From Tubulanus polymorphus (lineage: Eukaryota; Animalia; Nemertea): DNA of 64,000 bases. The notes under the pieces were generated by a model. It had not been told where the DNA came from. It searched no databases and saw only the letters and a program-made list of their open reading frames with translations. Below, piece by piece: positions 27,950-52,500 of this stretch. The first letter of the stretch is position 1. Each line of letters starts with the position of its first letter. A program made the position numbers and the translations under genes. The DNA lies in NCBI RefSeq assembly GCF_964204645.1, contig NC_134033.1, forward strand, positions 5,542,231-5,606,230. Direction: 5' to 3'.

Positions 27950-28178
27950 ATGAAAATAAACGATACTGTCATTAAAAGTTTATATAAATCTGCGATATTA
28001 GTATCTCATTGTGAAATATAAAATAGATATCTGAATTCTAAAATAAACAGAAATAAATTTGAATTTAAATGATACAATAAAATTGTTATCAATCATATTT
28101 GCATCTGAAATTATAATTGATTTTGTTGCAAGTCAAGATTCTATACCTCTTAACAATGTAATTCCTTTGAAATATTAA
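27950..28178 (+). pseudogene. Frameshifted small hydrophobic ORF resembling a conserved Polinton accessory protein
   Basis: MKINDTVIKSLYKSAILVS / NLNLNDTIKLLSIIFASEIIIDFVASQDSIP in two frames; family match is from recall, not a search. Confidence 0.4.
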
Positions 28179-28339
28179 CTTTTTATGATAGTTTCCATTT
28201 AATTTTTTACAATGTTTTAGTAAATTTTATATTTTGATTTAATAAATCTTTTGAAATATTTTCATTATAAAAATATAATGCAGCCAATATTAAACCTCCA
28301 GCTACTAAATTTTAAACATATACATATATTATTTTTCAA

Positions 28340-28750
28340 TCATTAATTTATAATATATTTGAAACATATAAGCTTAAGATTTAAGATTCAAATTTAATAT
28401 TCGATATATATTTTAAAATATCAAACTGTTATATATTTGAAATACATAATTTGAAATTTACCAAGATTCGAATGTAATATTTCATTAATTATTCTTAAAT
28501 ATTAAACTTTTATATATTAGAAACATATAATTTTATGATTTAATTTTTAAAATTTAATTAATTGTAATTCTAACATAAAACTTGTATATATTAGAAACAT
28601 ATAATTTCATGATTTCATAATTTATTAATTATCATTTTAATATACAAATTTTATATATTTGAAACATATGATAGTATTTCAGATTTAATTCTAATATTTT
28701 GATATTTTTGATATGTTTCACTTTTATATATTTGAAACATATAATCTAGT
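28340..28750. repeat. Degenerate ~70-77 bp repeat with core TATATTTGAAACATATAA (~6 copies)
   Basis: Core at ~28357, 28435, 28512, 28587, 28654, 28727. Confidence 0.6.
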
Positions 28751-29482
28751 ATTTCAACTTAATCTATTTTCAATATAGAATCATTACTCCTTTCATATTT
28801 TTTATGTTTAATTGTTTGATAATGCTTTGATTTATGTGCTTTTAAATATTTACCTCCACGATAAGAATACATTTTTTATTAGGATTGCATCTTTTCAATT
28901 CATTATTTAAACTACATTGAATTGCAATGTCTTTAAAAGATTTACTATTTTTTTAATCACATTGAATTCCAATATTTTATATATGTTCATCATCAATAAT
29001 TTGTTAATCATCAAAATTGAAATATTTTAAATGTCATTCTTTAATTTTTAGGTTTATCAAATCATCACCTTTTGAAAGTATTATATTAATTTTTGTTTCA
29101 TTAAAAGGAATTTCAAGAATACCTATTATGTTTTCATCGAAATTACCTTTAGAATTTAACACTGTACTAAATATTTTATGATTTCTAATACCATAATCTA
29201 AAGTATCTATTAGTTCAATAATTAAATATGTTTCATTTAATAGTAATTGATTAAACATAATGATATTATCAATTTCATATTGTCTTCCATACACTAGATT
29301 TTTTTGCTGAGATATAGTTTTTAATGTAAAAAAGTGAAAATCAGTTATTAGCTTCTTTTATTTCAATTTCGAATTCGGTTAATTTCTAATTTTCTTTTTT
29401 TCTAATTATTTACTCACTCACCAATTTACTCAATTAACCTGTTCTCCTCTGTATATATTCCCCTGTTTGTAACCTATATCTC

Positions 29483-29524
29483 ACACCTGAGGATGATCTC
29501 TAGGGTGAGATCGAAACGTCGTGT
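29483..29524 (+). ncRNA. Minimal type I hammerhead ribozyme (Penelope-like retroelement pLTR type)
   Basis: ACAC-CUGAGGA-U-GAUCUC(UAGGGU)GAGAUC-GAAA-CG-UC^GUGU: intact core, perfect 6-bp stem II, 4-bp stem I, palindromic ACGU helix III. Confidence 0.8.
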
Positions 29525-31926
29525 CTTATAAATATTTTAGATCGAATAAATAAATTCTTGTTTTTAAATTCTTTTAATCTGTAGATAGTGTGTTTTTATC
29601 TTATTATCCGTTCACCACGTATGAGTGTGGTTACCGTTTCTCTTAGTTTCTTATTTTTCTTTAATAATTCTTTAAGAATTCTAGAATGATTATATTAAAA
29701 TCCAAGTTATATTATAACTTTTTATTTTGTAAAGTCAATTATTATCATATATTATCATATATTTCATTAAGTATTTTATAAATATCATATGTTATTTACT
29801 CCTCATTTATTTATTATTTTTCTCCTTTATTTTGTAAAAAGTATTAAAAAATATATTTTTATCAACTCGTTATTGACTCGTTACTTTTAATCAATTATTT
29901 TATTATGTTTTCAGTAAATATCTAAAATCATTTTGCTCACACCTTACTTACACTTAATATATTCCAAAAGATATTGATATCTTATTAAATTAACACTTTT
30001 ATTTATCAAAAATGTTGATTATTTTAATATTGTATCTTTTACACATAAATATTAGAGTTAGTGCATAATTGTATTTTCAGATTGAAGGGAGAAAGGTTGA
30101 GTTAAGCCCGACATTTCGACCTTTGATCTGAAAATACAATTATACACTTACTCAATAAGACCAAAACACGATGATATTCAATAGTTGTTCTTTGTTATTG
30201 TGAGTCCAAAACCAGAATGATCCGTTGTGGTGATGGATTCTCCGCCAATGTTATGGTCGCGTATATCTACCAGTGCTGTGAATCCGGGTTGGGTTCTCCA
30301 ACTAGCGTTGTGGTAATAATTCCTCTCGTCGATGTTGCGAGGGACACTCTCTTAGGTCAGATCCCAGTCCTTGGTTTTGACTTCTTACACGGCTCCCAGA
30401 TATAACAAAACAATTTCTTAAGTTATCTTTCGTTTATTTCTTCTTCCCAGATGTATCCAGATCATTCCCCGGAGCTCCCGTGTTTACTGAAACCTCCCTA
30501 TTTATATTACTTTCTCTTTTGTAACGTGTGCAGGTCCTCTTCCACACATGGCTTGGAATTCATGGCTTGTGATGTATTCATACGTCACAACATTCCTCCC
30601 ATCCATGTATGGGCGATGACGTATCTGCACACGTCACAATTTTCTATAAATATATTTTTGCACTCAACAGAGTCAATGGCCGCACCATATTAGGTTTACT
30701 TACGTAGACACATACGTCACTTTCAGACTTGTTTATTTGTATTTCTTCTATTTATGTTTATGTATGACGTACGCATCAACGCAGGTTGTCTGGGAATAAC
30801 AACACTAGCCATGAACTCCAGCTTCCGTATATTTATCTAAACTACTAAACTATCAGCACAACAGATCCAGATTTACGACCGATCATAGACCTTCTTGGGT
30901 TTGGCTCCACCTCCTTGGACAAGGCAACCGATTGGTGGATAGAAACCGAGCTAAGGTGGAGGTTTGCCCAATAATTTGGTCCACTAATAGACGGAATTTC
31001 GGGTGAAGCAGTTTCCTTTAACATTAATCATAACACACTCAAATGAGATGTCACGTCAAGTTTCTATAATAAACGAAGACGTGTCTACTCCGATTTCGAG
31101 TGAATGAATTTATTCCTAAAATAGTTAATGTACTAAAAAGTCTGATATTCATATAAAATTAATTATGATATCTAACTAGGAAATATCACACTGATAAAAA
31201 TGATGCTCTATAATGTAATATAAATCTCTAATCAAAATGGATAAATCGTAAAGGATGATTCAGTGATGGTTACAGAGAGAAGGGGACGGAGAACTGGTGG
31301 ACCTAGCAGTGGCTGTTGCAAAAGAAAAGTTTGCTGTTGTAGCTAAGTTTTATCGGAGGCTTGGTCCATTTCGACCGCATTGTACGATTGGAGGAAGTTC
31401 GAAAATGTGATAAAAATGTCCAGATCATAAAATACAGAGATTTGTCAAGACTGCATATCGATTTCGGCTGTGGACATTACGATTAAGGAAAATAAAATCT
31501 GATTTGACAGGATAATTTCGCCTCAGCTGAAATTTTGCTGAAAGATGCGCGTATATACATAATGTCTAATGTTCATAATCGTTCCAAACATACGAGCTCA
31601 TAATCGATGATATTGGCCGATGACTAATGACGTATATCTGGAAAGCAAATAACAAAAAAAGAATTAAAATTAATTTCGACTTAAGAAATCTATAAAGATT
31701 AGAATTTGTTCTGACCATACGTATATAGATTTCAACGTATATAAATTGTAGCTATAATAGTTTTGTTAGAAATTGATTCTACTCATCCGCGCATATTGTG
31801 AGCGCTCATTATTGAGGTCTTTATTACGGAGTGATAAACGTGAGTTCGGGTTTAAATACGACCACGGTCGTCGGGACTTCATTTCATCGGATAAGCTACG
31901 CACAAAAGAAACACAATCGGTTTTCA

Positions 31927-33027
31927 ATGGCAGTTCAGATAAACGTGAGTTTGACCGTCAATGCTACCGATGTCACCGGTGTCACTGCAGTAAACGGCGG
32001 CTTCAAACCGCATCCCAGATGCAAATTCATCCACCATTCAGATTACAAACCGTTTCACGTGAACGCTTTCTACCAGGCGTCGAACTGGGTCGTCGCGAGC
32101 GTCGCCGCTTTCGGCGTCTTTCTTAACGTTTTGTCCTACGCGATCCTTCGCAAAGATAACGGGCAAAATACAAGTATTTTCTATCTGAAATATCTGGCTA
32201 TTCTAGACGCTTGTATGTGCGCGTCGTATCTGTTATTCGACTTTCATAATAAACTGTACAGTCACACGTTACTGCTCGACCATACCTTACAATTCAACCA
32301 CTTCATTAAACGAACATACCCGTACACGCAGAAGATCAGATTCTACTTTTCTGGTGTTGCCGATTTGTTAATTCTAATCGTAGCCGTTGATAGATTGATC
32401 GTAGTACGGTGGCCTCTGAAAGCGTGTGCGCTAATATCTTTAAAACGGGCTCGCTACAACGCAATAGGAATAACGATCTTAATGGCGGCCATTTCTTGTC
32501 CGTGGTTCTTTCAGAAATGGACTAAGAGATCGACGAATCCGTGTACCGGGCACGAACGATGGTCCATACGAATAACGGCGTTCAATAGAAGTCGGAATTA
32601 TCGTTTATACATGCTATTCGTGTACACGCCGGTGTTTCATATAGTCCCACCCGCCACCGTCGTGGTAATAACGGCGAACATAATCAAAACTCTCAAATCT
32701 ACCGCAAATACCAGAAAACACATGACGTCATCGACGACTCTGTCTCGGAATAAAGACGAACGTAGTTTGACGATCGCTTTAGTGATAATTTGCTATATTT
32801 ATTTGATTAAACGTGCCCTGCTCATGTCCGGCACAGTAAACAACTTTCTTGTTTTTAAATACGGCCCAAGCGCCTCGGTTCTATCCGGCGTCGGCGCGTA
32901 CATGGATGGCGCGAAAGATCTGATGAGGAAATGTTCGGCGTCGGCGAATTTCTTCGTCTACGTCGGGTCGAGAAGGAAGTTCCGACATCGGCTCAAGGAG
33001 ATGTTTTTGACGATTAAACGTTTTTGA
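31927..33027 (+). CDS. Intronless class A GPCR, FMRFamide-receptor-like (copy 2)
   Basis: ATG 31927 aligns with the paralog starts (MAVQINVS); 366 aa; DRL and SANFFVY motifs. Confidence 0.92.
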   Translation: MAVQINVSLTVNATDVTGVTAVNGGFKPHPRCKFIHHSDYKPFHVNAFYQASNWVVASVAAFGVFLNVLSYAILRKDNGQNTSIFYLKYLAILDACMCASYLLFDFHNKLYSHTLLLDHTLQFNHFIKRTYPYTQKIRFYFSGVADLLILIVAVDRLIVVRWPLKACALISLKRARYNAIGITILMAAISCPWFFQKWTKRSTNPCTGHERWSIRITAFNRSRNYRLYMLFVYTPVFHIVPPATVVVITANIIKTLKSTANTRKHMTSSTTLSRNKDERSLTIALVIICYIYLIKRALLMSGTVNNFLVFKYGPSASVLSGVGAYMDGAKDLMRKCSASANFFVYVGSRRKFRHRLKEMFLTIKRF

Positions 33028-33488
33028 GCCTAGAATATCTGGCTCGACGAGATGGCGTCTTTTTGTGGCTTTGAATGACCAACGCGTAATAATGCGCCTT
33101 TCACATTTAGATCACGATCAATGATTGACGTAAATAGAATATCTAGTGTCGGGTGGTTTTTTCTTCTGGTGCTTTATCTTTATCATCGTCATTGTTGTAG
33201 AGGCTTATAAAACTTTGGAACATGCGGCCGATTCATTTACAATTAAACTGACGACATCCGAGCTGTATCCGGATTGGAACGTCACGGTCGTCATCGGCTG
33301 ATAGCTGAGGGCCTGACCGCATTCCAAATATTGGGAATCGATTTATTTCCATCGAAACATTGTCGATAATATGAAGCTATAAATATGTAATTTTCATTCA
33401 AGTCATCAATAAACTTTCAAGTTAGGTTTGTTTTTAGACACGTATTGTATCGTATCACTTGGTTGGGGTTTTTTTAGTCATCAGCACC

Positions 33489-33586
33489 TGCAGTTCAAGA
33501 GTTTTGAGTTAAGATTTCACTCATAGTAAACTCATTGAAAATGAACTAACTCAGATTTAACTCTAAATCGCAACTGCATAACTGCA
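33489..33586. mobile_element. Diverged copy of the palindromic MITE at 55953-56062
   Basis: Shares GAGTTAAGATTT...AACTCATTGAAAATGAACTAACT; TGCAGTT/AACTGCA ends. Confidence 0.6.
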
Positions 33587-35313
33587 TTCAGTGATGGTCG
33601 TAGTGATCAGGCCACGTAACTGAATATCCTGCAATCAATAAAGACGTAATCAATAAGATGAATACATGAAATATTGCAATATTTATTTCATTGAAGCGCA
33701 AATCAGAGTAATATGAACAGATATTACATCTGCTGTCTGTCACATCCTCTCCGTGCGACGTTTTGGTTTGTAATTTCGGTAACAATCAATTGATCAGTGA
33801 ATGTCATGGCTGCATCATTTTGTTCAGTAAGTAATCTGCATTCAAAAATGAATAATGAATTAGCATAAATGCATGTTCGTGGCCCGTAATGTGGCGCCAC
33901 CTACAGTGTTTTGTTATGCAAATGATTACGTGATGACGTGTTAGCAACGTTTCCGAGCGTCCGCGGAGCAGTTTTTCAGCATTACGCGAGCGTATGCTGA
34001 GTAAACTATCGCTCATAAATAAAAAAACAAAAGCAACTCTAGTAAAAATCGTTGTTTATTCCTGAATGCAAATACCTCACTGAACAAATTGATGCATAAT
34101 AAAGGTAGATCAATCGATTATTAACGAACGGTTCAAAACGTCACACGGAGAGCCGATGTGACAGACAGTTATCAGAAAATTGTCTATGATGATATAACTG
34201 CTCGTATAATCCACAACCTGTGTCATTCACAAATTCCTCGCAGTGGATAAATCTAAACTTACAAGTATCCAATGTACGAAATATAATTTTCACAATCCCC
34301 ACCGCCATCATCACCATCCCCGTATCCAACTCACTGTTGCTTCAATGCAGACCATCTAACGTTAGTTTTCTAATATGTATCGTTCATTCATTCATATGAA
34401 TTCAGTAAAAATTCTAAAAAATAATTCGCAATATCTAAACACTAGTAGCGACACATATCGAATCGAGTGAGACTCACAATACAAAAATTCGTTCTTCGTG
34501 GATATAGAATAATCAGTCATTACATGATTTGAATACAAAATATACACTGTAAACAATATTGAGACATATTTGACTATACAGACGCGTAGCCATGCGCTAA
34601 AGGCGAGTAGCACACCATTGTGAGTTCTGGAATTTTTGTTGTTGACAAATTGTGCGATGCATTCCGGTGATTGTACACGTACATGACATTTTTTTCGTGG
34701 CGTTTTTATTGCTCGGAGAAAAATATAGTGTATACCCGGCGTATGTAGGCCTATAAACAAACACTATACGAACATTGAACATTGAATAATTGCATAGAAC
34801 CATGAAAAACATGCGGTTTCAAGAAAAATTCAATGGACAAATTTTACAAGATTAAAACCGAAATCACGTACGCTTTCACAGCAAGGACGAAATACTAGGT
34901 CGATATTCAGTAAAATCATCGTATGATCCCAGATTGAGGGATTACGAGAGAGACTTATGTTTTTAACATGTCATAAGCGTTTAAATTGATGGCCACCATT
35001 TAACCATGGACTCCAAAACGTTTTAGAGTCCATGATTTCACCGAACACTAAATCGGCGCTAGGGTGGACAGACTGCATACGACTCCCAAACTGCGCCGTT
35101 CAAACTTCAATAGCGGGAGGAAAAACCGGATCCCGAAATCTAGCTTAAACGAATGCTCCCGCCAAATATTGTACAAACAAGATAGGGGTTATAATCTCAA
35201 AAAATATTATCATCATCCAATGATGATAATAAATCGTTTAATTGAATACGCGATATTTAGATGAAGGTTTAGTTAACATTTCCAGTTTTAGACTGACAAC
35301 AAATAAATGATCA

Positions 35314-36202
35314 CTATCTTCTATCCAATTCCATCGCATTGAAATCCGCAACCGGCTGATTTTCCGTCAAGCCTCGTCTATGTTTTTGGCGCACTCTGTG
35401 CACACTGCACCCGATAGCGATTAGAGTTACCAACCCTAACACACCTCCCAACGAGGCGATCACTGTGATGAGCAGTTCGTCCTCATTTGCGGTCGGAGTT
35501 GGCGGTTTAGGGCGAAGTGGTGCCGTTGCAGTTATGGGAGCTGATGTAGTTGTATGAGCCAATGTAGTTGTAGGAGCTGATGTAGTTGTAGAGCGTGTGT
35601 AGTTGTAGGAGCTAGTGTAGTTGTGGGAGCTGGTTTAGTTCTCGTAAAAGCTGGTGTAGTTGTAGTAGGAGCTGGTGTAGTTGTAGTAGGAGCTGGTGTA
35701 TTTGCAGGAGCTGGTGTAGTTGTAGGAGCTGGTGTAGTTGCAGGAGCTGGTGTAGTTGTAGGAGCTGGTGTAGTTGCAGGAGCTGGTGTAGTTGTAGGAG
35801 CTGGTGTAGCTGTAGGAGCTAGTTTAGTTGTAGGAGCTGGCGTGGCACCAGCTTTAGTCGCCTGATCAAGACTTTGCGCTTCGAAATCGTATTTAACGAC
35901 GCATTGTTTCGGAGTGCCTTCGTCCGACGCTTCTACATAAACGATAAACTCTCCGGCCAGTTTTCGATCAGTGGAACGACCGGCCACAGAATTCCGATAA
36001 AAACTGGACCGAAGAGGTTCACGCCGTACCTCCGACTGCAGTTGTTACCGTAATAACCAGTTTTACACTCGCACGTATTATTCATCAGTGCAGACGCCCG
36101 GGTTCTGGCACGGAGTCGAACACGTGGCCACGTCACACTTCAGCGATGAGTTCCACCCGCTGTCGCAGGCGCAAACATCGAAACCCGTGCAAATTCCTTG
36201 TC
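35314..36202 (-). pseudogene. Frameshifted terminal exon: 2 EGF-like + partial cadherin + Thr/Pro mucin stalk + TM + short tail
   Basis: Acceptor ttcctag|36202. GQGICTGFDVCACDSGW...CQNPGVC / NNTCECKTGYYGNNC...PVF / VYVEASDEGTP / (PAPTTT)n / LLITVIASLGGVLGLVTLIAIG. Frame changes at ~36086, ~35997 and ~35591. Confidence 0.7.
35545..35850 (-). repeat. 18-bp mucin-like repeat (PAPTTT)
   Basis: GGAGCTGGTGTAGTTGTA tandem on the + strand. Confidence 0.9.
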
Positions 36203-36478
36203 CTAGGAAATATAAGAGGCGATTTAGTACAATTTGGAGATTCTATAATAATAACAACATTAATAACGAGTTAGAATCCAAAACTGTACATAAACCAGAA
36301 GTCCAGAAATTCTGAGAAAAAGCTTCTCTAAAACATTTCATTGACGGAATCGAGGTTAAAGGCGATTTCCTTGCGTTTGAAGAAGGGAAGCTATCGGAGG
36401 TCTGATGGAGTGCTAGCAGTGGCTGTTGCAAAAGAAAAGTCGGCAACTTATGCCCTAGTTCAGTTTGATCGGAGGCTT

Positions 36479-36664
36479 AGTTTTTAAAATTTTTTAACAC
36501 CCTCAACCCACTAAGCGCCACGCAGGGCATTATAAGTGGGTTCGATGTTTCTTTTTCCCAATGGGGGAGACCACAGAAGAACATTCGACCAAGGTTTGAA
36601 CCCATAAACCCTGGATTGACAAGACCAGTGACCGGCGGCTTCGACCACTCGGCCACTGTGCCTC
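36479..36664 (-). mobile_element. tRNA-derived SINE with 10-bp TSD TCGGAGGCTT
   Basis: A box TGGCCGAGTGG, B box GGTTCAAACC, tail GCCCTGCGTGGCGCTTAGTGGGTTGAGGG plus A-rich end; TSD at 36469-36478 and 36665-36674; empty site at 31353-31362. Confidence 0.85.
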
Positions 36665-37379
36665 TCGGAGGCTTGGTCCGTTTCTGTCATGCACCGCGCG
36701 ATTGGGTGAAAGTTCCAAATTTAATGAAAATGTCATGATTATTTAAAACAGGTATTTGCACACATTGCGTATTGATTTCGGCTTTTAGACATTACGATTA
36801 TGAAAATTATTTATTTGGACATTTGGATCACGTACATTACGATTATAAAAATGAAATCTGATTTACCAAGATGAATTCGCCTCAGGTATTTCTGAAATTC
36901 TTCTGAAAGATCTGCGTATACGTATTTTTATTGTTCGTATATCGTCCAAACCGAACTCATAAAAATTAAGATTGGCTGATGACTATTGACGTATTTATCT
37001 AGTTAATTAAACAAAAAAAGAGAAAAAAAATATTCCATGACTCTGCTCACAAAAATCGACTTGAGAAATCGATAAAGTTTAGTAACATTTTTCTGGTTAG
37101 TATATATATAAATATAGATTTCCACTAAAAATATAGCTACGTACATCAGTTTTGCAAGAAATCGATTCTACTCATCTGCGCACATTGTGAGCGCTCATTA
37201 TTGGTGTTTCTTTACGGAGTTTTAACGTGAGTCGGGACTTCATTTTATCGAGTAGTAACTCCACCAGAATGATGCAAAAAGAAAGCATTTTGCTCATTTC
37301 TAAGTTAAAGGCGATGTTGAATGTAAGTATGAAGAGTTTTGTCGGCTGACTTTTCAACAGCGGAGCAGACAAACTATCT

Positions 37380-37645
37380 GCAGTGAACGACAGACGACTA
37401 TCTGTATTGAGGAGCAGACGACTATCTGTATTGAGGAGCAGAACGGCTACCTGTATTGAGGAGCAGACGACTATCTGTATAGAGGAGCAGAACGACTACC
37501 TGCATTGAGGAGCAGACGACTATCTGTATAGAGGAGCAGAACGACTACCTGTATTGAGGAGCACACAAATATCTGTATTGAGGAGCAGAACACTATCTGT
37601 TTTGAAGGGCAGACGACTATCTGTATTCAGGAGTAGACGAACGGT
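37380..37645 (+). repeat. Minisatellite of ~21 bp units (GAGGAGCAGACGACTATCTGTATT-like) directly upstream of GPCR copy 3
   Basis: ~12 tandem units ending just before the ATG at 37651. Confidence 0.9.
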
Positions 37646-37650
37646 ATTCG

Positions 37651-38748
37651 ATGGAAGCTCAGATAAATGCGAGTTTGAGCTTCAATGCTACCGATGTCAC
37701 CGGCGTCACTGCAGCAAACGGCGGCTTCAAACCGCATCCCAGATGCAAATTCATCCACCATTCCGATTACAAACCGTTTCACGTGAACGCTTTCTATCAG
37801 GCGGCGAACTGGGTCGTCGCGAGCGTCGCCGCTTTCGGCGTCTTCCTAAACGTTTTGTCCTACGCGATTCTTCGCAAAGATAACGGGAAAAATACGAGTA
37901 TTTTCTATCTGAAATATCTGGCTATTCTAGACGCTTGTATGTGCGCATCGTATCTGTTATTCGACTTTCAAAATAAACTGTACAGTCACACGTTACTGCT
38001 CGACCATACCTTACAATTCAACCACTTCATTAAACGAACATACCCGTACACGCAGAAGATCAGATTCTACTTTTCTGGTGCAGCCGATTTGTTAATTCTA
38101 ATCATAGCCGTTGATAGATTTATCGTAGTACGGTGGCCTTTGAAAGCGAGCGCGCTAATTTCTTTGAAACGGGCTCGCTACAACACATTAGGAATTACGA
38201 TCTTAATGGCTGCTATTTCTTGTCCGTGGTTCTTTCAGAAATGGGCTAAGAGATCGACTAATCCGTGTACCGGTCACGAACGATGGATCACACGACTAAC
38301 GGCGTTCAACCAAAGTCGGAATTATCGTTTATACATGCTATTCGTGTACGCACCGGTGTTTCATATAGTCCCACCCGCCACCGTTCTCGTGTTAACGGCA
38401 AACATAATCAAAATACTCAAATCTACCACGAATACCCGGAAACACATGACGTCATCGACGATTCTTTCTAGGAATAAAGATGAACGCAGTTTGACGTTGG
38501 CTTTAGTGATAATCTGCTGTATCTATCTGGTTAAACGTACTCTGCTCATGTCCGGAACGGTAAATAACTTTCTTGTTTATAAATACGGTAAAAGTGGCTC
38601 GCTTCTAGCCGGCATCGGTCCGTACATGGACTTCGCGAAAGATCTGATGAGGAAATGTTCGGCGTCGGCGAATTTCTTCGTCTACGTCGCGTCGAGAAGG
38701 AAGTTCCGACATCGGCTCAAGGAGATGTTTGAGACGTGTAAACGTTAA
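37651..38748 (+). CDS. Intronless class A GPCR, FMRFamide-receptor-like (copy 3)
   Basis: 365 aa, near-identical to copies 1 and 2; flanks homologous to those of copy 2. Confidence 0.92.
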   Translation: MEAQINASLSFNATDVTGVTAANGGFKPHPRCKFIHHSDYKPFHVNAFYQAANWVVASVAAFGVFLNVLSYAILRKDNGKNTSIFYLKYLAILDACMCASYLLFDFQNKLYSHTLLLDHTLQFNHFIKRTYPYTQKIRFYFSGAADLLILIIAVDRFIVVRWPLKASALISLKRARYNTLGITILMAAISCPWFFQKWAKRSTNPCTGHERWITRLTAFNQSRNYRLYMLFVYAPVFHIVPPATVLVLTANIIKILKSTTNTRKHMTSSTILSRNKDERSLTLALVIICCIYLVKRTLLMSGTVNNFLVYKYGKSGSLLAGIGPYMDFAKDLMRKCSASANFFVYVASRRKFRHRLKEMFETCKR

Positions 38749-41700: not shown

Positions 41701-42038
41701 TGCTGAGTTTGTAATCCGTAAACCTGATAGTTCAAGTGGCCGGTAGAGAGTTTGGCAGATTCCGATCGGTCTCTGCCGATTCCGAAAGTCTCGGTATTGA
41801 GTTTGTGAATCTCGAATCGATATTACTTAAACGATTGAAATCTGCCTTTAAAGGTGAATAGTACAAATTACGTAAAAAAATCAACGTGGGCAGCTTGTGT
41901 GTTAACATGAGTAGGCTTAACTTTGAAACCAGGCATATGTGCTTGTTCAGAAAAGTATGTGTGCTTTGTCAGCACTTTTTGAGCTGCAAATGACTGAATT
42001 GTGAATTTTGTTTTTCAGTAGGCCTAAAATAATGCATA

Positions 42039-42174
42039 ATGGCGGAGAGTAATCCACAGATAAACGTAGATAATTCGGAATCAGTTCAAATCGGCGACAA
42101 ATGTACAATGATAATAAATCAGTGTTGCCACCATGAAGATAAACTATCCAACGAAAGACCTCCTCAGAATCTAG
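42039..42174 (+). CDS. First coding exon of the NLR, encoding a RHIM motif
   Basis: MAESNPQINVDNSESVQIGDKCTMIINQCCHHEDKLSNERPPQNL; in-frame TAA at 42030 fixes the start; acceptor ttttcag at 42018. Confidence 0.8.
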
Positions 42175-45100
42175 GTAATTATCGATTTTAACCATCTTAA
42201 CCGTTAAGGGGGCTCGTTTTGGTTCTAGGGCACCGTACTCTTTTTGACCTCCGAAGTCTCCAACCGAATTATCCGGTTGGCTCCACACTAAATCCGAATC
42301 GCACCCGCACCTTAACAGGACGGAGGTTTGGAACACGCTAAAAGGTCATTTGACCAATATAAGAATACGATTGGAGGCAAACGGATGCTCCGATCTGATT
42401 ACTGAGTAAAGCCTTACTGCAATCGTAAATCATAAGACTTTTCCAAAGGCCGGAGACAACAAGGATACCTTGCCCCTGGAGAATGGTCCAATCGACCCAC
42501 TTGGTTTTAATCTTTGTACAAAACACAAAAAGAAAAATAGGATATTAACCCACCATGTAGCCTATTATCTGAAAACAAATATGAAATCATTATTTCTCTG
42601 ATCGAAAATAAGGTACTTCATGTAGTAATTGTTTTATATTTGCACTATAAAAATCCAAAACTGATCTAATTATTACAGAAGTCAATCAAGTTCAGAAGTG
42701 TCTCGAACGAACGTACGACCAAATGATCGATGTTGAAGATTACAAAGAGGTTTGGTGGAGCGATAAATTCATCAATTTCCACGACTTCTTCACCAGAGAA
42801 CACGCAAAAATTCGACCCCGAAAGCAGAATGAAAACAACGAGGAGCAGTCAGTGATTTTACCCGATGATTTCGAGAAGCTTTTCGCTTATTACCCGCGCG
42901 CTATGAAACGTGTGTGCCTCGTAGGTGAGCCCGGTATGGGTAAAACAACGCAGGTTATAAATCTGGTTTTGAACTGGACGAGCTCACCGACGGAGTTTCT
43001 AAAGGGGTTCCCTATGTTGTTTTATATACCGTTAAATGATCTGCCCACTGATAACCCGTGTATTCATACGTACATTTTCGAAAATCTTTTGAATCAAGAA
43101 ATCAAACAGGATCTGCCGATTAGTATTTTTGAGACATTCGTACGGAAAAATTCAGAGAAGGCGATATTCTTTCTAGACGGCTTCGACGAGTTGAAAAGCG
43201 ATAAAGCGAAGAAGGACATCGTACGCGTTATCAATGCATTACCGAAAGCGCATATCGTCATAACAACACGTGAGTCCGGGGGCAGCATAATCGTCACTGA
43301 TCCAAAATTCACCGTTGCTTCGATATCCGGCTTCAGAATGGAAGAGGTCATCGACATTATGAGGAGAAAATTTCCACAGCGCGATCCGTATGATCTGTTC
43401 AACATGCTCAGTAACAAAGTAACTCCTTTATTTAAAAGTATCTACTACAACCCTCTGATACTACATATGTTTTGTTTTCTCTATATGGACGAAGAAGAAA
43501 TTACGGTTCCGTCCAAACTCACCAATATCTACATCGATATGACATGTTTTCTGATCAGTAAACGCGAGGGTTTCGACTTGTCGTCGGAATGTTTTTTCGG
43601 CGATATTGAAAATTCGGTAGCGCTCAAACAAATTTGTAAAATTGCGTACGAGACGCTCATCGCGCGTCAAAACAGCTTTAGCGAAAATCGTCTGAAACCC
43701 GACGAATCGAAGAGGACGGCTTTGACGTGCAAAGAGGTGTCACCGCGACATAAATCGGACCGCTCCGTCCAGCTACGATTTGTTCACAAATCTGTGCAAG
43801 AATTTCTGGCGGCGGTAGACTCGGTCGTGCAATTCAACGATCATTGTGGCGAAATACCCTGGAACAGATGCGCGTTTGATCAACTACCGGACGAACTTGA
43901 GAAATATGGCGAATTATACCCGAGATTCGTTGCAGGGCTACTGCATCGTTACATGCATAACCGTGGCCTTGCTGAACTCTTCAAGACTTTGATAGATGAT
44001 AGATTTGTAAAAGTAAAAGTGGAGGGTTTCGTGGATGTATTTAGCCGTCGAAATGGACTCCTGATGGCGCTCGTCCCCGATTACGAACGCTTCATCCAGT
44101 TACAATCCGAAAGCTATCAATTATCAGATCAGTTGTTAATCTACCTGAATGAAGCCGACTGTCCGGACGACGCCATCGGCGAAATCGTTCACTACATGGG
44201 AAAAATGTTAATCGTCCGTGTGGATAGCGGATTCGAAATAAACGTACTGGCAAAAATACTCCGACAAAACGAATGCCCGATCGAGGTTGTTTACATAATA
44301 GATCTCAATTACGAACTGGAACCCGGTGGATGCGCCGATGAATACCGCGAATTAGGAACGGCCATAACTAGTAACACTAGTCTTCGGGGTATGATAGTTA
44401 AGACGGACACGTCATCGTCATTAGACGGACCAAATCCGTACTTGCCTACGTGTCAGAAGAGCAACAGTATAGATTGGTTTGTGTGGGAAGATGGAAATAA
44501 TGTTTGTATATGTTACAAGAAGTTTAATTGCGAATGGACTAGAACCAGTCGGTTGATTACGCGTGAAGATGAAGATCAGCTGACCAGTCGTGATGCTTTC
44601 ACAAAGAGTAGAGAAGAAATTCTGTTAATCGAAACTGCGGCTAGTTCGAAACTTTTAGGCGATATTCGGAAATCCTATCCATTCGTAAAGCATTTATTTC
44701 TCCAAGTACCTCCGGTTAAAAGCGAAAATGTGATCGGAGAGCTGACGAAGATAATACCGGTGTTGAAGAGCGTTCACCTCAACGAGATCTTCGATGAATA
44801 TTTGAGCGGGGAAGAATTTAACTACTTTAACAACGCCTTAAAGTCTTCAGATATCGAAACAATTTGGCTCGATCTGAAGAAATTAACCACAAGTCAATGG
44901 GCAGAAATTAGCGACAGCGTCGGTTCAATGCCGAAACTTAAGCACCTTTTTGCTAATGCAAGAATAAGCCGAATTCTAGATCAACTGCCACAGCTGACAG
45001 TGTTATCAATAGATTTGCGTTCAGGAGCTGACGGCGACGCGCTTGTTCGGTATCTGTCATCGAATGCGGTAAACGAGCTGCGAGAAGTCGCTATCTCGAT

Positions 45101-45373
45101 GGAACGAAACATCACATTACCATCTTACGACAAATTAAAACGGTATCGACGCTTCGTAGGTTAAAGTTACTCGCGCATAGAAAAAGCATCGATACACAGG
45201 ACGATATCGACAAAAACGTCGAATTAATCGTCGAATTAATCGATAATCTAGCGCACCTGTCTTTTCTGCATATCGGTTATACGGGCGGCGACCATACTGC
45301 GATCATAGACGACATCAAATCAGCGCTAAAGGAACTCAATAAAAAATTGAGAGTCATTTTATCACCTTGGTAG
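42039..45373 (+). CDS. NLR: N-terminal RHIM - NACHT - degenerate LRR
   Basis: Exon 42039..42174 (G|GTAATT, phase 1) joins acag|42679 in frame with ORF 42723. Walker A GEPGMGKT, Walker B IFFLDGFDEL, sensor IVITTR, NPLIL, winged helix FVHKSVQEFLAA. The frame stops at 45164, but LRR-like coding continues in the -1 frame to TAG 45373. Confidence 0.85.
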
Positions 45374-46499
45374 TTCCCCTCTACGACGAACAACGTCCGT
45401 TCTAGAGACGGAACGGAACTGCACTGATATAAAAATTTAATCATGAAATCACCGTCGTGAAACATGTATTTCTGTTGAAATCTTAACTGCCCACTTATTA
45501 TCTAGTATAATTTCGATAATATTCAGCTGGAAATTATATTTCATACATTGGATTCCGTAAGTTTAGATATTTCCTTTGGGGGAATGGGGTACGCGCACAA
45601 CAAGCTATCCCGCCAGATGGCGTGACGAGTAGTAGGTCACCCGATGTCAAAATTAGTTCATTTTCAATGAACTTTGAACTGGATTTTTGGACTGTCTCCC
45701 GAATCGATATTATTATCACCCAGCACCCAGCAAATACACAATACTTTCATTCTTCTACTCGGACATCGCTGTAGCTTTCTCAAATAATTTATTCACATTT
45801 GGAGAAAAGTTTTCATTCAGACTTTATTGAAATGTAGAACGACCAAATATCTACTAGCGAACCTGGCGGATCCTCGCCTGCCATACGTGGAATCCTCGAT
45901 TGCCACAGTAGCACTGCGCGTACCCGTTTTGAGAATGCCGAGAAAGTTGTTGATTATACGAACAGTTATATCAACATTATGCTGGTATAACTGCTACCAT
46001 AGTAAATTTTCTAGTTAAATCTCTGTTTTATTCTGCTTTGCGCCTCAATAAAATAGATATATCGCAATAATTCATATCATCTTATTACCGTCATTTTTGT
46101 TCGTGATTCTATTGTTTCGTGGGCTGATCACCACTGCCATGTGAATCATGTTTTAAAAACGGCGTCTGGTTACTGGAAACATCCCCAAAGATCACAATCG
46201 GACTCGATTCACTCTAGTTTCACATAGTCAGGAATGGAACAATAGCTGATATTTTTGATTGATATATTGTGGGTTTTGTTCAATTAGTTGCTAGACTTTA
46301 TCAGTCCGCGAGCACCTGCGAGGATCGAGATGGGGACAACACTTCACTGCCGAGTAAAACTGATAGAAACCGCAAACTTTATGTGCCTTGGATTTTTTTA
46401 TAGTTTTTCAGAAAGTCAAACAATTTATAAACCTAAAGAAACGCGAGAAATCCTACAATAAATACAGCCGAAACGAGAAAAGAAGAGTATATATATTTG

Positions 46500-48045: not shown

Positions 48046-49591
48046 TCGTGCTGTATTATGAAATAGTATACAATCATCATAATTCATACAATACGCGTCT
48101 CGTACAGTTAGTAAATTACTACTAACTGCTACTACTACAAAATATAGATATAAATTCGATTAAAAGGAATTAACGAAGAAAGTAGGTATTTAAGTGGAAA
48201 ATCAGTTGAAGTATTTGGAAATAAGTAGACTATTTGAGCTCATAGTCTTGTCCTAAGGGAATTAATATCAACACGAATTCATTATCTGCAATCGAAAAAT
48301 TCGAAATAACTTCAATCGACTAATGTTTAGTCGTGTGTCTATTTTTGGTTTAAATTCCGTTTGGAATGAAAGATTTCTAGAACTGATTCGAGTATTTCCG
48401 TCGTTACGGAAATAGGTCAAGCGCCTTTCGAATCGATGCTTTTTTCCGGCGGAAAATCCACATTTCGCAAACAGCTTGTCAACCAGGAAGTTATCTAGAC
48501 AGTTGTGCGTCAACGTTAGGGTTTATTCCACGACTATATCGACATTTAAATGTTAGAGGTCGATCACGTTATTCGTATGTATATTACATTTTATTTCGTT
48601 TCGTTTGTTTCGCTGTGTCAAATTTATAGCTTGTCAAAAAATGAAAACGTAAGTTATTTCGCTGCGATAGAGGTTTTAAAGCATTCTAAAGAATTATTGG
48701 ACTGTACATAGAAAACAAATTTTTGTCAGTGTCAGTAAAATGTGGGAGCGGTTAAATGTTGGCCGACCATTATTGAATATACGGCCACGTTCATACGCGC
48801 TGTCGAAGAAACATTCGAAATTCCACCCGGTGATAGGAATTAGAATAATTTGATTTCTCTAATCTCACAATCCGAATCTGATTCTGATTTAATTCATCAA
48901 GCAATCAGAATAATTTGATTTTACTATTCTCACAATCAGAATAATAAAAATGGAATACTTAACTGCTCACGATCGGGTGATCTAATCGGACCTGAGTTCC
49001 CAACCATTGGCTTTGTCACATTTTGAGTAACGATGACTCGTGATTTCGGCAAAGTCAACTCACATCTGACTGATATCTACTGACCTAATTTTTCGCTAAA
49101 TGACGAACGGTCGAAGGAAGCAGCTCCTAATTCACCGGCGTGCTGTAGAACTGTCTCACAGTCGTTGAAATACCGATAAATGGCGAAACATTTCAAAAGA
49201 TGTTTCTTTAAAAGATGTTTTTTTTTAAATCGCAGAAAAATTCCCCGAAATCTCGCCATTGAACCCGATACACAACTATACTCGTAGGGAATATAGGCAT
49301 AGATCTACACGTATACTTGTGTAGTATTAACGATAAATTTTTCATATGCCGATCGCATTTGTTATCATCGCTAGTCAAATGGAAACCACAGCTTTATGCC
49401 GAGAACGTCAGGTTTTGAATTCATTTTATCAAAATTTCTTCGCCCACTCTTTCCTTTTATAACGAGTCCGAAGATTCAAATGCTGTTCACGTCATTTTCT
49501 ATTCTAGATTCAGATCGTTTAATCCGTTGTGTGAAATCGAGACTTATTGAATGGGAATCTAGAGGTCGATATTGGCGGAAACACTCCGAAA

Positions 49592-52500
49592 ATGACGCCG
49601 ACTAGAGTTTCGCTGCCCGTCGCGTTGTTGATGGTCACCGCTGCGTCGCTCGCGTCCGCCCTAACTGAATTACATCTGCCCGGCGCGATCACTGGTACTC
49701 ACGTGGTGACCAAAGCGGCTGGTCCGTATTTGATTAAAACGCGTCAAACGGTGACCGTGTCGTCGACGGGTTCGCTGAAAATCGAACCGGGCGCGATCAT
49801 CCGTTTCGAACGCGGAGCCGGGCTCGTTTTGAACGTGCGCGGCGGCGCGCTGGAAATGGTCGGCACGGCCGCCGAAAAAATCTCGTTCATCTCGAGCGAG
49901 ATGTCGCCTGTGCGTACGAGGCGATGGGTCGGGATTACGATTACGGCGACGGCCGGTAATCGAGCGCTGACAATCGGTCACGTGAATGTGCAGAACGCCG
50001 GGCAGACGGGTCGAATAGCCGCCCTCAATATCTCTGGTCACGGGGCAGATTTACGCGTACACGACGTCAAAATCGAAAACTCATCAGCCGCCGGACTGTA
50101 CGTGGATGACGATTGGTCGGAAATCGCGTTGTCGAACGTCGCGGTCGAAAACTGCAACGGTACCGGCGTGACAGTGTGTTCGTGGAGACGAAACGCGGTT
50201 TTGAAATCAGTGACGGTGGTCGGGTGTAAAAACGGCACAAAGATTCAAACGCCGTCGACGTTTCCGAGCCCGACGATCTCATTTTGTAATTCGCAACCGA
50301 AAAATCGACGTTTATCCGGAAGCGGAGTTTTAGCAGTTTCTTTCAATACACCGTACAAGGGATACCCTACCAGTTGTCAAATGGTACGTACACTACGCTT
50401 CTATCCATTTACCTTTCAGTGCGTGTACACCACGGTGCGATGTACAGCTGGTGATAGCCATTCACTAGTACACTGCACTGTGGTGTATTCATATAATCAG
50501 TAATTGATTTTTTCATCTGGTATTGAAAGATGGCAGCACCTTTCGAACGTGAAATATTAGTAGATCCCGGCTAACCAACGAAACATCGCAGCTCGGTAGG
50601 CGCGCTATAGTGGCATGCTCGTTATTCAACACAGTTTCATAGGTTTGAACCCAATTGCACAAACCGTCCTCTGGTATCAGTTTCGCTATTAATCCCCCTG
50701 TTACACATTGCCAACTGTACTCCACATCAAATTTCCGATTCGACGGTGTTCAGGATCCTCAAATATAGTTCTCAAACCAGTTCCACAGTTTGGATTTCGT
50801 TACTTGAAAGTGTCCCGAGTTCAAATAAGTTCGGAGCCAAGCTCATTCATTCATTCCCCAGTGAATTGCCCCTGGACTTATTAGGGGTATTCCACGCAAC
50901 ATCAGCACAGATAAATGAACAGGGCAGCTTGTGTATTTAAATATATTGAAAAAAGGCTTGTAGAGTCCAGAGGATTTTCAAACAATTTCTAAGCGCTTGA
51001 AGGACTTAATAAGCTAAGATAATAAGCTAAATCTCACGTTACGCGGACTGCTGTTGTCTTATTAGTTTGCGGGTAAATAAAGAGCCACGAAAAAAACACT
51101 GCCTTTGTTTTTTCGGGCACGGGTAAATTTCGAGTGAGCACGTTCTCCCTGTGCCATCCGAATGTACCGTTTTTTTAACGGGATTCATTTATTGTTGTTT
51201 TTCAGACGTTTGAAAGCGACCCGGGAGACGTGGTGGAACTGTTACGATTCGATACGACAACCTCATATCCCAACGTCGAAGTAAAAGATTCCAGCGGCGC
51301 CGTGATATATACTGGAATTATGAAACATTTTGAATCCGTTACGAGTCCCTCGTCGAAGATGGAGGTCAAAATTACGCAGAATTATGACAAGAAACATCGA
51401 TTTTTGGTAATTTCTCAGAAAAAAGGTAATATACATGATTATACGGGCTAAAAGTAGCGGGCATAGTTCCTACTCTGAAATCAGGATCAAATTTAAATAT
51501 CTAATATCAAAAATATCGCAGTCAAATTGGAAAACTTAGCTTTTAACATACCGGGCTGGCATTTGCGTGGGATGACGCTAGTTTCTAGTTACAAATAAAA
51601 TCGACCACAAATAAAATCGATTCTTATACCGCACAGAAAGGGTTAGATCCTAATCGATGAATTATATTTGGCAGTCATGTAGGAAATCTTCACTTAACTT
51701 ACCGGGTTGACATTTGTGTGTAGTGTTACGCCACTTTTTCATTACTTATAACACCAATACCACCGATTAATACACCGCACAGCGGTGTAGACGCACTGAA
51801 AGGGTTAATTTTTCATCGATGCTATTACCATGAAATTACGCTAGCAATAGCGTTCTCTTCCCCTACAGCCATTGGAAAACTTAACGTTTAACATACCGGG
51901 GTGACATCATTAATGTTGGGTAACGCCACTTTCAACATAATCAATATCAATTCCGCCGATTTATACACCGCACTGCGGTGTAGACGCACAGAAAGGGTTT
52001 ATTTATCATCGATAACGTTTACCTTTTGTAGGTCGCCGAATTTCGATCGAAGATTCCATCGCGCGAAACAACAGTGAAAACGGGCTGACGTTCGCCGGTA
52101 AACTCGGCGCCGTATCCGTGAGGCGAGTCATTATCGACCAGTCGCGAATCGGAATCCAGTCACTCGCGGATTCGTTCCTCGCGCTCGAACTGACGCGAAC
52201 GAACGTAACGCGCAGCGGCGAATACGGAATATTCTTTGCCACGAATTCCGGAAACATGTCCCTCGTCGATTCCGCGATAAACGACTCGAGAAAGCGCGGT
52301 ATCCGCGTCGTTAACTGGTACAGTTGGAACTGTCATAATAGAGCGATTACTATTCGTAATTCAACGTTGGAAAATAATGCGGAATCGGCCGTCGACGTCG
52401 ACGACGTTTGTCTCGTCGAATTCGACGCCGCGAACAACGTCGTCTCACGCAATAAAGTCGGGCTCAAAATAACAAACGTACACGGCCAAAACGGACTCAA

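What the first reader, a model, noticed from the sequence alone, without database searches (positions are those of the whole stretch)
42039..45373. Animal NLR whose only N-terminal signalling module is a RHIM amyloid motif, hidden in a small exon
Seen: a 136-nt exon missed by the ORF track splices in phase (G|GTAATT ... acag|AA) onto the NACHT exon. It encodes QINVDNSESVQIGDKCTMIIN (42057-42119, VQIG core at 42084-42095). An in-frame stop at 42030 leaves no room for a death, CARD, PYD or TIR domain. Known: this aligns closely with RHIMs (RIPK3 NIYNCSGVQVGDNNYLTM, RIPK1 TIYNSTGIQIGAYNYMEI), which assemble amyloid signalosomes. NLRs with an N-terminal amyloid motif are the architecture of fungal NWD2/HET-S signalling, and RHIM-bearing NACHT proteins have only sporadically been noted in invertebrates. 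Inference: ligand-induced NACHT oligomerisation nucleates a RHIM amyloid that activates a RHIM-bearing kinase, adaptor or pore-forming effector encoded elsewhere, i.e. a fungal-style NLR-amyloid immune or cell-death pathway in this animal lineage.
Basis: partly seen in the sequence, partly recalled or inferred. Interest (0 to 1): 0.9.

Follow-up and report, generated by a model that had tools for sequence, protein, structure and literature searches.

The report
Ribbon-worm NLR with diverged RHIM-like exon
A ribbon-worm immune-receptor gene (NACHT-LRR type) really does begin with a small exon descended from the RHIM amyloid-signalling motif instead of a death-fold domain, but this copy of the motif is diverged, the layout was already described in amphioxus and elsewhere in this genome, and amyloid signalling is untested.

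Summary
ATG 42039, donor G|GTAATT at 42174, acceptor cag|AA at 42678/42679 and the in-frame stop at 42030 are all present. The RefSeq model of Tubulanus polymorphus LOC141910891 (873 aa) is exactly this splice.

The exon belongs to a family of about 20 homologous mini-exons. Most of those examined lie upstream of a NACHT exon; a few are truncated fragments. Three of them pass Pfam's RHIM threshold. The window's own copy does not: VQIG is kept, but the Asn found in three of four comparison RHIM motifs is Cys. A RHIM profile built without the mini-exon family still ranks it first in the window, though only at 10.7 bits. So it is RHIM-like by descent and weak by score.

The C-terminus of a paralog folds as an NLR-type LRR. 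The reference allele carries a 10-bp deletion that cuts the last ~97 residues.

No RNA data were reachable, so exon use rests on RefSeq and on exon-level conservation. No partner is encoded nearby. Two non-NLR RHIM ORFs lie elsewhere in the genome.

RHIM-NACHT was described in amphioxus in 2014, and this scan has already reported the same family at least eight times on other DNA of this genome. Verdict: a new member of a known kind, with mechanism inferred.

The parts
42019..42174 (+). Exon carrying the start codon. Its 5' edge is inferred from the conserved acceptor-like tgtttttcag|TA at 42018/42019. The CDS is 42039-42174: 45 codons plus 1 base, with a phase-1 donor.
   Evidence: The same acceptor and donor (CTAG|GTAATTAT) occur in the paralogous mini-exons. 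Nucleotide identity to paralogs L030/L031 is 80% in the exon against 46-65% in the intron. The RefSeq model P0001 starts at this ATG.
42032..42052 (+). Six-codon upstream ORF (ATG 42032, TAA 42050-52), out of frame and overlapping the main ATG. The main ATG has A at -3 and G at +4.
   Evidence: read from the sequence. Any effect on translation is untested.
42060..42119 (+). RHIM-like motif (INVDNSESVQIGDKCTMIIN), core VQIG at 42084-42095. It is diverged: G-D-K-C where three of the four comparison RHIM motifs have G-x-x-N.
   Evidence: No Pfam RHIM hit. Scores 10.7 bits, E 0.034, with a RHIM profile built from four motifs outside the mini-exon family, and ranks first among 1,917 six-frame peptides of the window. 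hhalign of the family against those motifs gives probability 72.5%, E 3.3e-5. Homologous exons score 21.9-22.3 bits against the Pfam cut-off of 20.
42175..42678 (+). Intron of 504 nt, GT..AG. It is about 220 nt longer than in the closest paralogs and holds a high-copy repeat around 42150-42540.
   Evidence: Contig depth reaches 400-1,400 in bins 42152-42539.
42679..45164 (+). Large coding exon as it stands in the assembly: pre-NACHT linker, NACHT, helical domains and LRR-like repeats. The stop at 45162-64 is created by the frameshift.
42909..43376 (+). NACHT domain. Walker A GEPGMGKT lies at 42924-42947.
   Evidence: Pfam PF05729, E 7.5e-18, 65.4 bits against a cut-off of 26.7. Walker A position.
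44040..45161 (+). C-terminal repeat region, LRR of the ribonuclease-inhibitor/NLR type by homology to the modelled paralog.
   Evidence: AF2 model of the paralog P0002 C-terminus built on alignment A3: pLDDT 80.8, alternating strand-helix units. Foldseek best hits are chains of NLRP-containing oocyte complexes, NLRC4 and ribonuclease inhibitor, E 6e-9 to 1e-5. Pfam finds no LRR in the window's protein. The PDB profile search gives only weak ribonuclease-inhibitor and RSU1 hits, E 0.15-1.5.
45089..45090 (+). Site of a segregating 10-bp indel. The assembly has the short, frameshifting form.
   Evidence: table 4: 10 bases put in behind 45089 in X1 and X2 contigs, absent from the X3 contig. X2 and X3 come from the same sample.
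45092..45373 (+). Ancestral C-terminal coding tail, 93 codons plus TAG at 45371-73. It is out of frame in the assembly and in frame in the long allele, whose product would be about 946 aa.
   Evidence: for the frame; 49% identity, E 7e-26 to P0002:850-983. for the arithmetic.

Best explanation
This is a genuine two-coding-exon NLR gene of the nemertean Tubulanus polymorphus, LOC141910891.

Shown:
- A 45-residue N-terminus, encoded by a small exon, is spliced in phase onto a single large NACHT-LRR exon.
- No other N-terminal domain can be attached.
- The small exon is one member of a lineage-specific family of RHIM-derived mini-exons that head the paralogous NLRs. Some of those are canonical enough to pass Pfam RHIM.
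- This copy keeps the VQIG core and the following T-M but has lost the Asn.

Inferred mechanism: ligand- or nucleotide-driven NACHT oligomerisation brings several N-terminal RHIM-like strands together. They nucleate a RHIM-type cross-beta assembly that recruits a RHIM-bearing adaptor encoded elsewhere. Candidates are the non-NLR RHIM ORFs on C3 and C8.

The reference haplotype carries a 10-bp deletion that truncates the last LRR units. An intact allele segregates.
For: Gene model:
- Searches show the signals, the phase and the closed frames.

Exon reality:
- 80% nucleotide identity to paralogs in the exon, against 46-65% in the intron and 55% upstream.
- Conserved acceptor and donor.
- The one SNP seen in the exon is synonymous (42122 G>A).

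Family:
- About 20 homologous mini-exons. Most of those examined lie upstream of a 920-1000-aa NACHT exon; a few loci hold only truncated remnants.
- RefSeq isoforms splice them in series.

RHIM descent:
- Pfam RHIM run over the whole genome gives 5 hits over the cut-off. Three of them are these mini-exons.
- 3 of 15 family exons match RHIM.
- hhalign of the family against motifs outside the mini-exon family: 72.5%, E 3.3e-5.
- The window's exon is the top scorer in its window with a profile built without the mini-exon family.

NLR body:
- NACHT E 7.5e-18.
- LRR fold of a paralog.

Precedent:
- RHIM-NACHT-repeat architecture in Branchiostoma (PMC4262963).
- A Branchiostoma NLR with a VQIG motif just before its NACHT was recovered here (P0059).

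Possible partners:
- Non-NLR RHIM ORFs at C3:26755833 (21.7 bits) and C8:4552388 (19.4 bits).
Against: - This copy gives no Pfam RHIM hit at E<=10 and only 10.7 bits with the independent profile, against 8.1 for the best unrelated peptide.
- It has Cys where three of the four comparison RHIM motifs have Asn.
- Exon-1 dN/dS is 0.54-0.65 on a tiny sample, so constraint is weak.
- Sister genes tolerate core-deleted or degenerate mini-exons. One close relative, P0003, has lost the start codon in front of its core. The core therefore looks dispensable in parts of the family.
- No RNA run held the locus and no spliced junction was seen.
- No partner gene lies nearby.
- The reference allele is frameshifted.
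- Profile and single-sequence searches of PDB sequences found no RIPK RHIM.
Confidence: 0.5

Rival explanations
1. Relic motif. The exon is used, but in this gene the RHIM has decayed (Asn to Cys, no HMM match) and no longer nucleates amyloid. The N-terminus is a short disordered leader, or the receptor acts through other surfaces or through hetero-oligomers with paralogs. The gene may be drifting towards loss.
For: - No Pfam RHIM hit and a marginal 10.7 bits.
- dN/dS 0.54-0.65.
- Core-deleted and degenerate exons persist in paralogs.
- The closest relative P0003 starts after the core.
- A frameshift allele sits in the reference.
Against: - The VQIG core and the following T-M are kept.
- Exon identity of 80% is close to that of the NACHT exon, 84-88%.
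- An intact allele exists.
- The ORF is otherwise open over 2.6 kb.
Confidence: 0.35
2. Exon not used. The mature mRNA begins downstream or skips the exon, translation starts at Met 42723, and the product is a bare NACHT-LRR protein. The RefSeq model would then be a prediction carried over from paralogs.
For: - No RNA evidence could be obtained.
- An out-of-frame upstream ATG at 42032 precedes the main ATG.
Against: - Exon-level conservation against diverged flanks.
- Conserved splice signals in about 20 paralogs.
- The 14 codons between the acceptor and Met 42723 are conserved with the paralogs' linker.
- The RefSeq model includes the exon.
Confidence: 0.08
3. Chance resemblance. VQIG arose by chance in a short leader peptide unrelated to RHIM.
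For: - The tetrapeptide occurs 4 times in the six-frame translation of the window.
- No Pfam hit for this copy.
Against: - The exon aligns along its full length with paralogous exons, at 39-76% identity.
- Three of those pass Pfam RHIM's curated cut-off, and they are among only five such hits in a 268-Mb genome.
- hhalign E 3.3e-5.
Confidence: 0.04

Closest known systems
Branchiostoma floridae RHIM-NACHT-repeat proteins (e.g. BF82280; Kajava et al. 2014, Sci Rep, PMC4262963)
   Same: - An animal STAND/NLR protein in which a RHIM sits where a death-fold domain usually is. The authors compared it explicitly with fungal NWD2.
- A Branchiostoma NLR with a VQIG motif directly before NACHT-LRR was recovered here (P0059).
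   Different: - Different phylum (Nemertea, Spiralia) and no close sequence relationship: NACHT identity is 26-30%.
- P0059 has an extra HEPN_DZIP3 domain.
- Here the motif is a separate phase-1 mini-exon. This copy does not reach the Pfam score.
- Neither system has been tested experimentally, as far as the searched literature shows.
Paralogous RHIM mini-exon NLRs of the same genome (RefSeq P0002, P0004, P0007-P0012; earlier scan notes s1-484221, s1-500216, s1-500215 and others)
   Same: - Same exon family and the same splice signals.
- Same NACHT-LRR exon, at 59-69% identity.
   Different: - The window's gene has a single cassette and a diverged second half (D-K-C-T-M).
- Sisters have 2-4 serial cassettes, a ten-unit 21-residue array in one exon (7 units in the RefSeq protein), canonical VQIGDNNTMNV cores, or core-deleted cassettes.
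Vertebrate RHIM proteins RIPK1, RIPK3, TRIF, ZBP1 (Pfam PF12721)
   Same: A short, unstructured motif with an [IV]Q[IVL]G core. Paralog exons pass the Pfam model built on these proteins.
   Different: - The motif is attached to a NACHT-LRR, not to a kinase, a TIR domain or a Z-alpha domain.
- This copy fails the model.
- No RIPK match was found in sequence searches of the PDB.
Fungal NWD2/HET-S and other NLR-associated amyloid signalling motifs (HRAM, PP, sigma; bacterial BASS)
   Same: An N-terminal short amyloid-type motif on a NACHT STAND protein. PP and BASS3 are regarded as RHIM homologues (PMC12261475).
   Different: - In fungi the effector with the matching motif is usually the adjacent gene. 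Here the neighbours are GPCR, SRCR and beta-helix-like ORFs without the motif.
- The C-terminal repeats are LRR rather than WD, TPR or ANK.

Membership tests
RHIM (Pfam PF12721) | Score at or above the curated gathering threshold (20 bits) of the 22-position model | tested here: not met
   The window's 45-aa exon peptide gives no hit at E<=10. Paralogous exons score 21.9-22.3 bits, and 3 of 15 family exons match.
RHIM (Pfam PF12721) | Core tetrad [IV]-Q-[IVL]-G | tested here: met
   VQIG at 42084-42095.
RHIM (Pfam PF12721) | Asn three residues after the core Gly, then a hydrophobic residue (G-x-x-N-x-[MLI]) | tested here: not met
   The window has G-D-K-C-T-M. The Asn is replaced by Cys and the Met is kept. 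The three non-NLR Tubulanus RHIM ORFs have G-N-x-N (alignment A2); the Branchiostoma motif in A2 does not.
RHIM (Pfam PF12721) | Homology to sequences that do meet the model | tested here: met
   - 54% identity to the Pfam-positive exons of L033 and L037 in alignment A1.
- hhalign of A1 against A2 (motifs outside the mini-exon family): 72.5%, E 3.3e-5.
- hmmsearch with the A2 profile: 10.7 bits, E 0.034, top of the window.
RHIM (Pfam PF12721) | Forms homo- or hetero-amyloid with other RHIMs | not testable with these tools
   The complex prediction of four copies gave no answer. This needs ThT, EM or seeding assays.
NLR (NACHT-LRR) | NACHT NTPase domain with Walker A and Walker B | tested here: met
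   PF05729, E 7.5e-18. GEPGMGKT at 42924-42947. The LDGFDE stretch is read in P0001.
NLR (NACHT-LRR) | C-terminal leucine-rich repeat domain | tested here: inconclusive
   Met for the family: the AF2 model of the P0002 C-terminus has pLDDT 80.8, and its Foldseek top hits are chains of NLRP-containing oocyte complexes, NLRC4 and ribonuclease inhibitor. For the window's own protein, Pfam finds no LRR, and the reference allele loses the last ~97 residues.
Fungal-type NLR/effector amyloid signalling pair (NWD2/HET-S-like) | The same motif on an effector protein, typically encoded next to the NLR | tested here: not met
   - No second motif copy lies in the window.
- The family-type motif copies without a full NACHT exon that were examined are truncated NLR fragments beside LINE-like ORFs.
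- The only non-NLR RHIM ORFs are on other chromosomes, and their domains are unidentified.

The most novel reading that the evidence does not exclude
The diverged RHIM-like tip of this receptor is a working amyloid nucleator. Tubulanus would then run an NLR-to-RHIM-adaptor relay, an animal counterpart of fungal NWD2/HET-S. The family would tune or diversify its output by changing the sequence and number of RHIM cassettes, and this gene would be a single-cassette, Asn-less specificity variant that pairs with its own partner.
Probability: 0.25. Interest if true: 0.75.

Novelty: new member of a known kind. Interest (0 to 1): 0.45.

Why it matters
No animal NLR with a RHIM in place of a death-fold domain has been tested experimentally. 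The idea has rested on a 2014 sequence analysis of amphioxus. A second, unrelated animal lineage with an expanded family of such receptors makes the question testable: do animals use NLR-nucleated amyloid signalling as fungi do? The family offers natural variants to compare, namely canonical, diverged, deleted and multiplied motifs. This gene supplies the diverged single-motif case.

It also corrects a 2024 survey that listed Nemertea among the phyla without NLRs (PMC11508797). On its own, this gene adds little beyond what the scan already reported for its sister genes.

Tried and rejected
- RNA evidence. The look-up of sequencing runs found no RNA holder. The three runs that hold the locus are contigs containing intron sequence, so they behave as DNA. 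The one run guessed to be RNA held nothing, and no 42174^42679 joint appeared.
- PDB sequence searches with the exon-family profile and with a canonical paralog exon gave only chance hits, no RIPK or HET-s.
- Complex prediction with four copies of the 45-aa peptide returned 'no answer' (score 0.02). This counts neither for nor against binding.
- Candidate partner on C3 (L046):
  - The homolog search found nothing, probably because of the length window.
  - Pfam, NCBIfam and PDB sequence searches gave no TIR.
  - A genome-wide TIR_2 scan did not hit the locus.
  - The single-sequence AF2 model was unusable, pLDDT 35.
  - Only a language-model similarity to TICAM2/TIRAP-type TIR adaptors remains (0.91), and that is a lead, not a finding.
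- The helical N-terminus of paralog P0006 got no atlas, Pfam or NCBIfam assignment.
- The look-up of encoding contigs had no record for P0001.
- The bacterial promoter/terminator scan is irrelevant for an animal gene.
- The motif-bearing exons on C8 (L039, L042, L043) were considered as partner genes and rejected. They are truncated NLR 5' fragments next to LINE-like ORFs.
The only spliced protein used was the database's own P0001. All other searches were made exon by exon, by reference.
Full report
**Observation**

- An ATG at 42039 opens a 136-nt coding stretch that ends CTAG|GTAATT at 42174. This is a phase-1 donor.
- The acceptor ttattacag|AA at 42678/42679 continues the frame as Glu, then 14 further codons, into the 813-aa ORF that starts at Met 42723.
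- VQIG lies at 42084-42095 and an in-frame TAA at 42030-32.
- About 20 nt upstream of the ATG there is a polypyrimidine-CAG (tgtttttcag|TA, 42018/42019). All three frames are closed between it and 42052, so if this exon is included no upstream domain can be fused.
- A six-codon out-of-frame uORF (42032-42052) overlaps the main ATG, which has a good context (A at -3, G at +4).

**Identity of the gene**

A search of the large exon found a 100% match, which NCBI names an uncharacterized protein LOC141910891 of Tubulanus polymorphus, a palaeonemertean ribbon worm. This protein (P0001) is 873 aa, and its sequence is exactly exon 1 + Glu + exon 2. The exon is therefore annotated, not hidden.

P0001 is the database's own product, and all other searches were made by reference, exon by exon.

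Domain evidence:
- Pfam gives NACHT at E 7.5e-18 with weak NLRC4_HD2. Walker A is GEPGMGKT.
- Pfam sees no LRR.
- An AF2 model of the C-terminal 424 residues of paralog P0002, built on an 11-paralog alignment, reached pLDDT 80.8 and shows alternating strand-helix units.
- Its best Foldseek matches are chains of NLRP-containing oocyte complexes, NLRC4 and ribonuclease inhibitor (E 6e-9 to 1e-5).

The family is NACHT-LRR. For the window's own protein this is by homology (61% identity in that region).

**The 3' end**

- The stretch 45092-45370 in another frame is 49% identical (E 7e-26) to the C-terminus of P0002.
- Contigs from runs X1 and X2 carry 10 extra bases behind 45089 that restore that frame.
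- A contig of X3, from the same sample as X2, has the short form.

The reference haplotype therefore carries a segregating 10-bp deletion. It replaces the last ~97 residues (about two LRR units) with 24 unrelated ones. The long allele would give about 946 aa.

**Is the exon real?**

No RNA evidence was obtainable. No RNA run holds the locus. The runs that do hold it contain intron sequence and show no 42174^42679 joint.

The indirect evidence is good.
- A six-frame search of the animal's own 268-Mb genome with the 45-aa peptide found about 20 homologous exons.
- They share the pattern M-A-[EQ]-S-N-P-G-I-N ... core ... R-P-[AP]-[EQ]-N-L, the same G|GTAATTAT donor and the same tttttcag|TA acceptor.
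- Most of those examined lie 0.3-4 kb upstream of a 920-1000-aa NACHT exon that begins with the same linker; a few loci hold only truncated remnants.
- Against the closest paralogs, nucleotide identity is 80% in exon 1 and 84-88% in exon 2. It is only 46-65% in the intron and 55% upstream.
- The only SNP seen in exon 1 is synonymous (42122 G>A).
- dN/dS for the exon is 0.54-0.65, but on about 130 sites only.

**Is it a RHIM?**

By descent, yes. By score for this copy, no.
- Pfam's RHIM model (22 positions, cut-off 20 bits), run over the whole genome in six frames, gave five hits over the cut-off. Three are mini-exons of this family: C6:17608530 and its duplicate at 22.3 bits, and C56:25435 at 21.9 bits.
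- When the exons were scanned individually, 3 of 15 matched RHIM, with best E 7.2e-5. The window's exon gave nothing at E<=10.
- The canonical sisters read VQIGDNNTMNV. The window reads VQIGDKCTMII. It has Cys where the three non-NLR RHIM ORFs of this genome have Asn.
- A profile built only from four motifs outside the mini-exon family (three Tubulanus ORFs and a Branchiostoma NLR) scores the canonical sisters at 24-27 bits. It scores the window's exon at 10.7 bits (E 0.034).
- That is the top rank among 1,917 six-frame peptides of the window, but not far above the best unrelated peptide at 8.1 bits.
- hhalign of the family against those motifs gives 72.5% probability, E 3.3e-5, over 20 columns.
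- Sequence searches of the PDB found no RIPK or HET-s chain.
- The bare tetrapeptide is not rare: it occurs 4 times in the window's six frames.

**Family context**

A tree of the NACHT regions was built from 14 Tubulanus family proteins, rooted with a long-branched Asterias outgroup (P0043). The fragments P0040/P0041 and more distant NLRs were left out.
- It places this gene with the other chromosome-9 genes (P0002, P0003, P0004) as early branches.
- A well-supported derived clade (100/99) holds the cassette-array genes and paralogs whose N-terminus is an Ig-TM ectodomain or a ~300-aa helical region.
- The RHIM-type exon thus looks ancestral to the family, with later exon swaps. The rooting is uncertain.

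Sister genes show the range of variation:
- two to four serial cassettes that RefSeq isoforms splice in frame;
- a ten-unit array of a 21-residue unit ending at VQIGDK within one exon (L030; the RefSeq protein P0004 starts inside it and carries seven);
- degenerate cores (SIIG, RKSG);
- core-deleted cassettes;
- one gene (P0003) whose model starts after the core.

This variability cuts both ways. It shows an evolving signalling module, and it also shows that the core is dispensable in some copies.

Outside Tubulanus, an exhaustive HMMER pass over 1.84 billion representatives found only 8 hits below 1e-30. Six of them are Tubulanus-family proteins. The other two are a Branchiostoma DED-TRADD_N-NACHT protein and an Asterias NLR, at 27-30% identity. 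As far as the data reach, the family is lineage-specific.

**Partners**

Nothing in the window carries the motif. The neighbours are rhodopsin-type GPCR ORFs, an SRCR ORF and beta-helix-like ORFs.

Motif exons on C8 without a NACHT ORF turned out to be truncated NLR 5' fragments next to LINE-like ORFs.

Non-NLR RHIM hits:
- C3:26755833, in a 434-aa open frame with a globular N-terminal part, a coiled-coil-like stretch, the RHIM (21.7 bits) and acidic repeats.
- C8:4552388, at the end of a 231-aa exon (19.4 bits).
- C7:3977744, a weaker one at 16 bits.

The N-terminal part of the C3 ORF is placed by language-model features next to TICAM2/TIRAP-type TIR adaptors (0.91), which would make it TRIF-like. 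No HMM, PDB or fold evidence supports this, so it stays a lead.

**Mechanism**

Shown: the architecture (RHIM-derived peptide, NACHT, LRR), and that no other N-terminal module can be attached when this exon is included.

Inferred, by analogy with RIPK1/RIPK3 necrosomes and with NWD2/HET-S: NACHT oligomerisation clusters the N-terminal strands. They nucleate a cross-beta RHIM assembly that templates a RHIM adaptor.

For this particular copy I give that about even odds against the reading that the motif has decayed. The complex prediction of four peptide copies gave no answer.

**What is known**

Kajava et al. [quoted passage not shown] Later reviews of amyloid signalling still cite only that work for animals.

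A 2024 survey listed Nemertea among the phyla lacking NLRs (PMC11508797), which this family contradicts.

This scan has already reported the same family on other DNA of this genome at least eight times, and also the Ig-TM-NACHT paralogs. My family-level results were obtained before I read those notes, and they agree with them.

**Verdict**

This is a new member of a known kind. Interest is moderate. The gene is the single-cassette, Asn-less, polymorphically truncated member of an interesting family that has already been noted.

Noticed in passing
window 45089/45090 and 45092-45373: A 10-bp indel is heterozygous in one sample: present in X1 and X2 contigs, absent in X3 and in the assembly. The short reference allele frameshifts the NLR and removes its last ~97 residues.
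   Followed up: yes
window 1-11552 (+): An open frame of 3,831 codons whose first 9.2 kb is a 267-bp (89-codon) tandem repeat, 34 copies at 90% identity. Only spurious or weak Pfam matches were found. It looks like a giant repetitive, mucin-like secreted protein gene.
   Followed up: partly
window 21802-38748: A cluster of intronless rhodopsin-type GPCR ORFs (7tm_1, Srw-like) on both strands: 25056-26156 (-), 31831-33027 (+) and 37651-38748 (+).
   Followed up: partly
window 57406-59982 (+) and 59092-59277: An 858-codon ORF with an SRCR domain and a 27-bp Gly/Thr/Ser-coding tandem repeat. ORFs with weak beta-helix matches lie at 49547-50503 and 62907-63812.
   Followed up: no
window 42150-42540 and 45450-46030: High-copy repeats lie inside the NLR intron and just downstream of the gene, with summed contig depth up to 1,400 and 20,000. 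One X1 contig joins 42305 to 45606, presumably through this repeat family. This explains why the intron is about 220 nt longer than in the paralogs.
   Followed up: partly
L046 (G000:C3:26755419-26756720, - strand): A 434-codon open frame with a Pfam-positive RHIM (21.7 bits) after a globular N-terminal part that language-model features place near TICAM2/TIRAP TIR adaptors. It may be a TRIF-like adaptor, but no HMM or fold support was found.
   Followed up: partly
L049 (G000:C8:4552388) and L051 (G000:C7:3977744): Two further non-NLR RHIM-like motifs, at 19.4 and 16 bits. The first sits at the end of a 231-codon Pro/Ser-rich exon. The gene models were not recovered.
   Followed up: partly
L039, L042, L043 (G000:C8:3595869, 2387460, 3808436): Three near-identical copies of a two-unit motif exon followed by only the first ~80 codons of the NACHT exon, then LINE-like ORFs. 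These are NLR 5' fragments apparently spread with, or broken by, retroelements.
   Followed up: partly
P0006 (residues 1-300) and P0005, P0038, P0039: Paralogs in which the RHIM exon is replaced. P0006 has a ~300-residue helical region of unknown family. P0005 (seen directly) has a signal peptide, a weak Ig-like match and a TM ectodomain; P0038 and P0039 show a TM-like segment before their NACHT. All are fused to the same NACHT-LRR exon.
   Followed up: partly
literature: PMC11508797: A 2024 survey states that NLRs are absent from Nemertea. The Tubulanus family, with at least 12 RefSeq proteins, contradicts this.
   Followed up: partly
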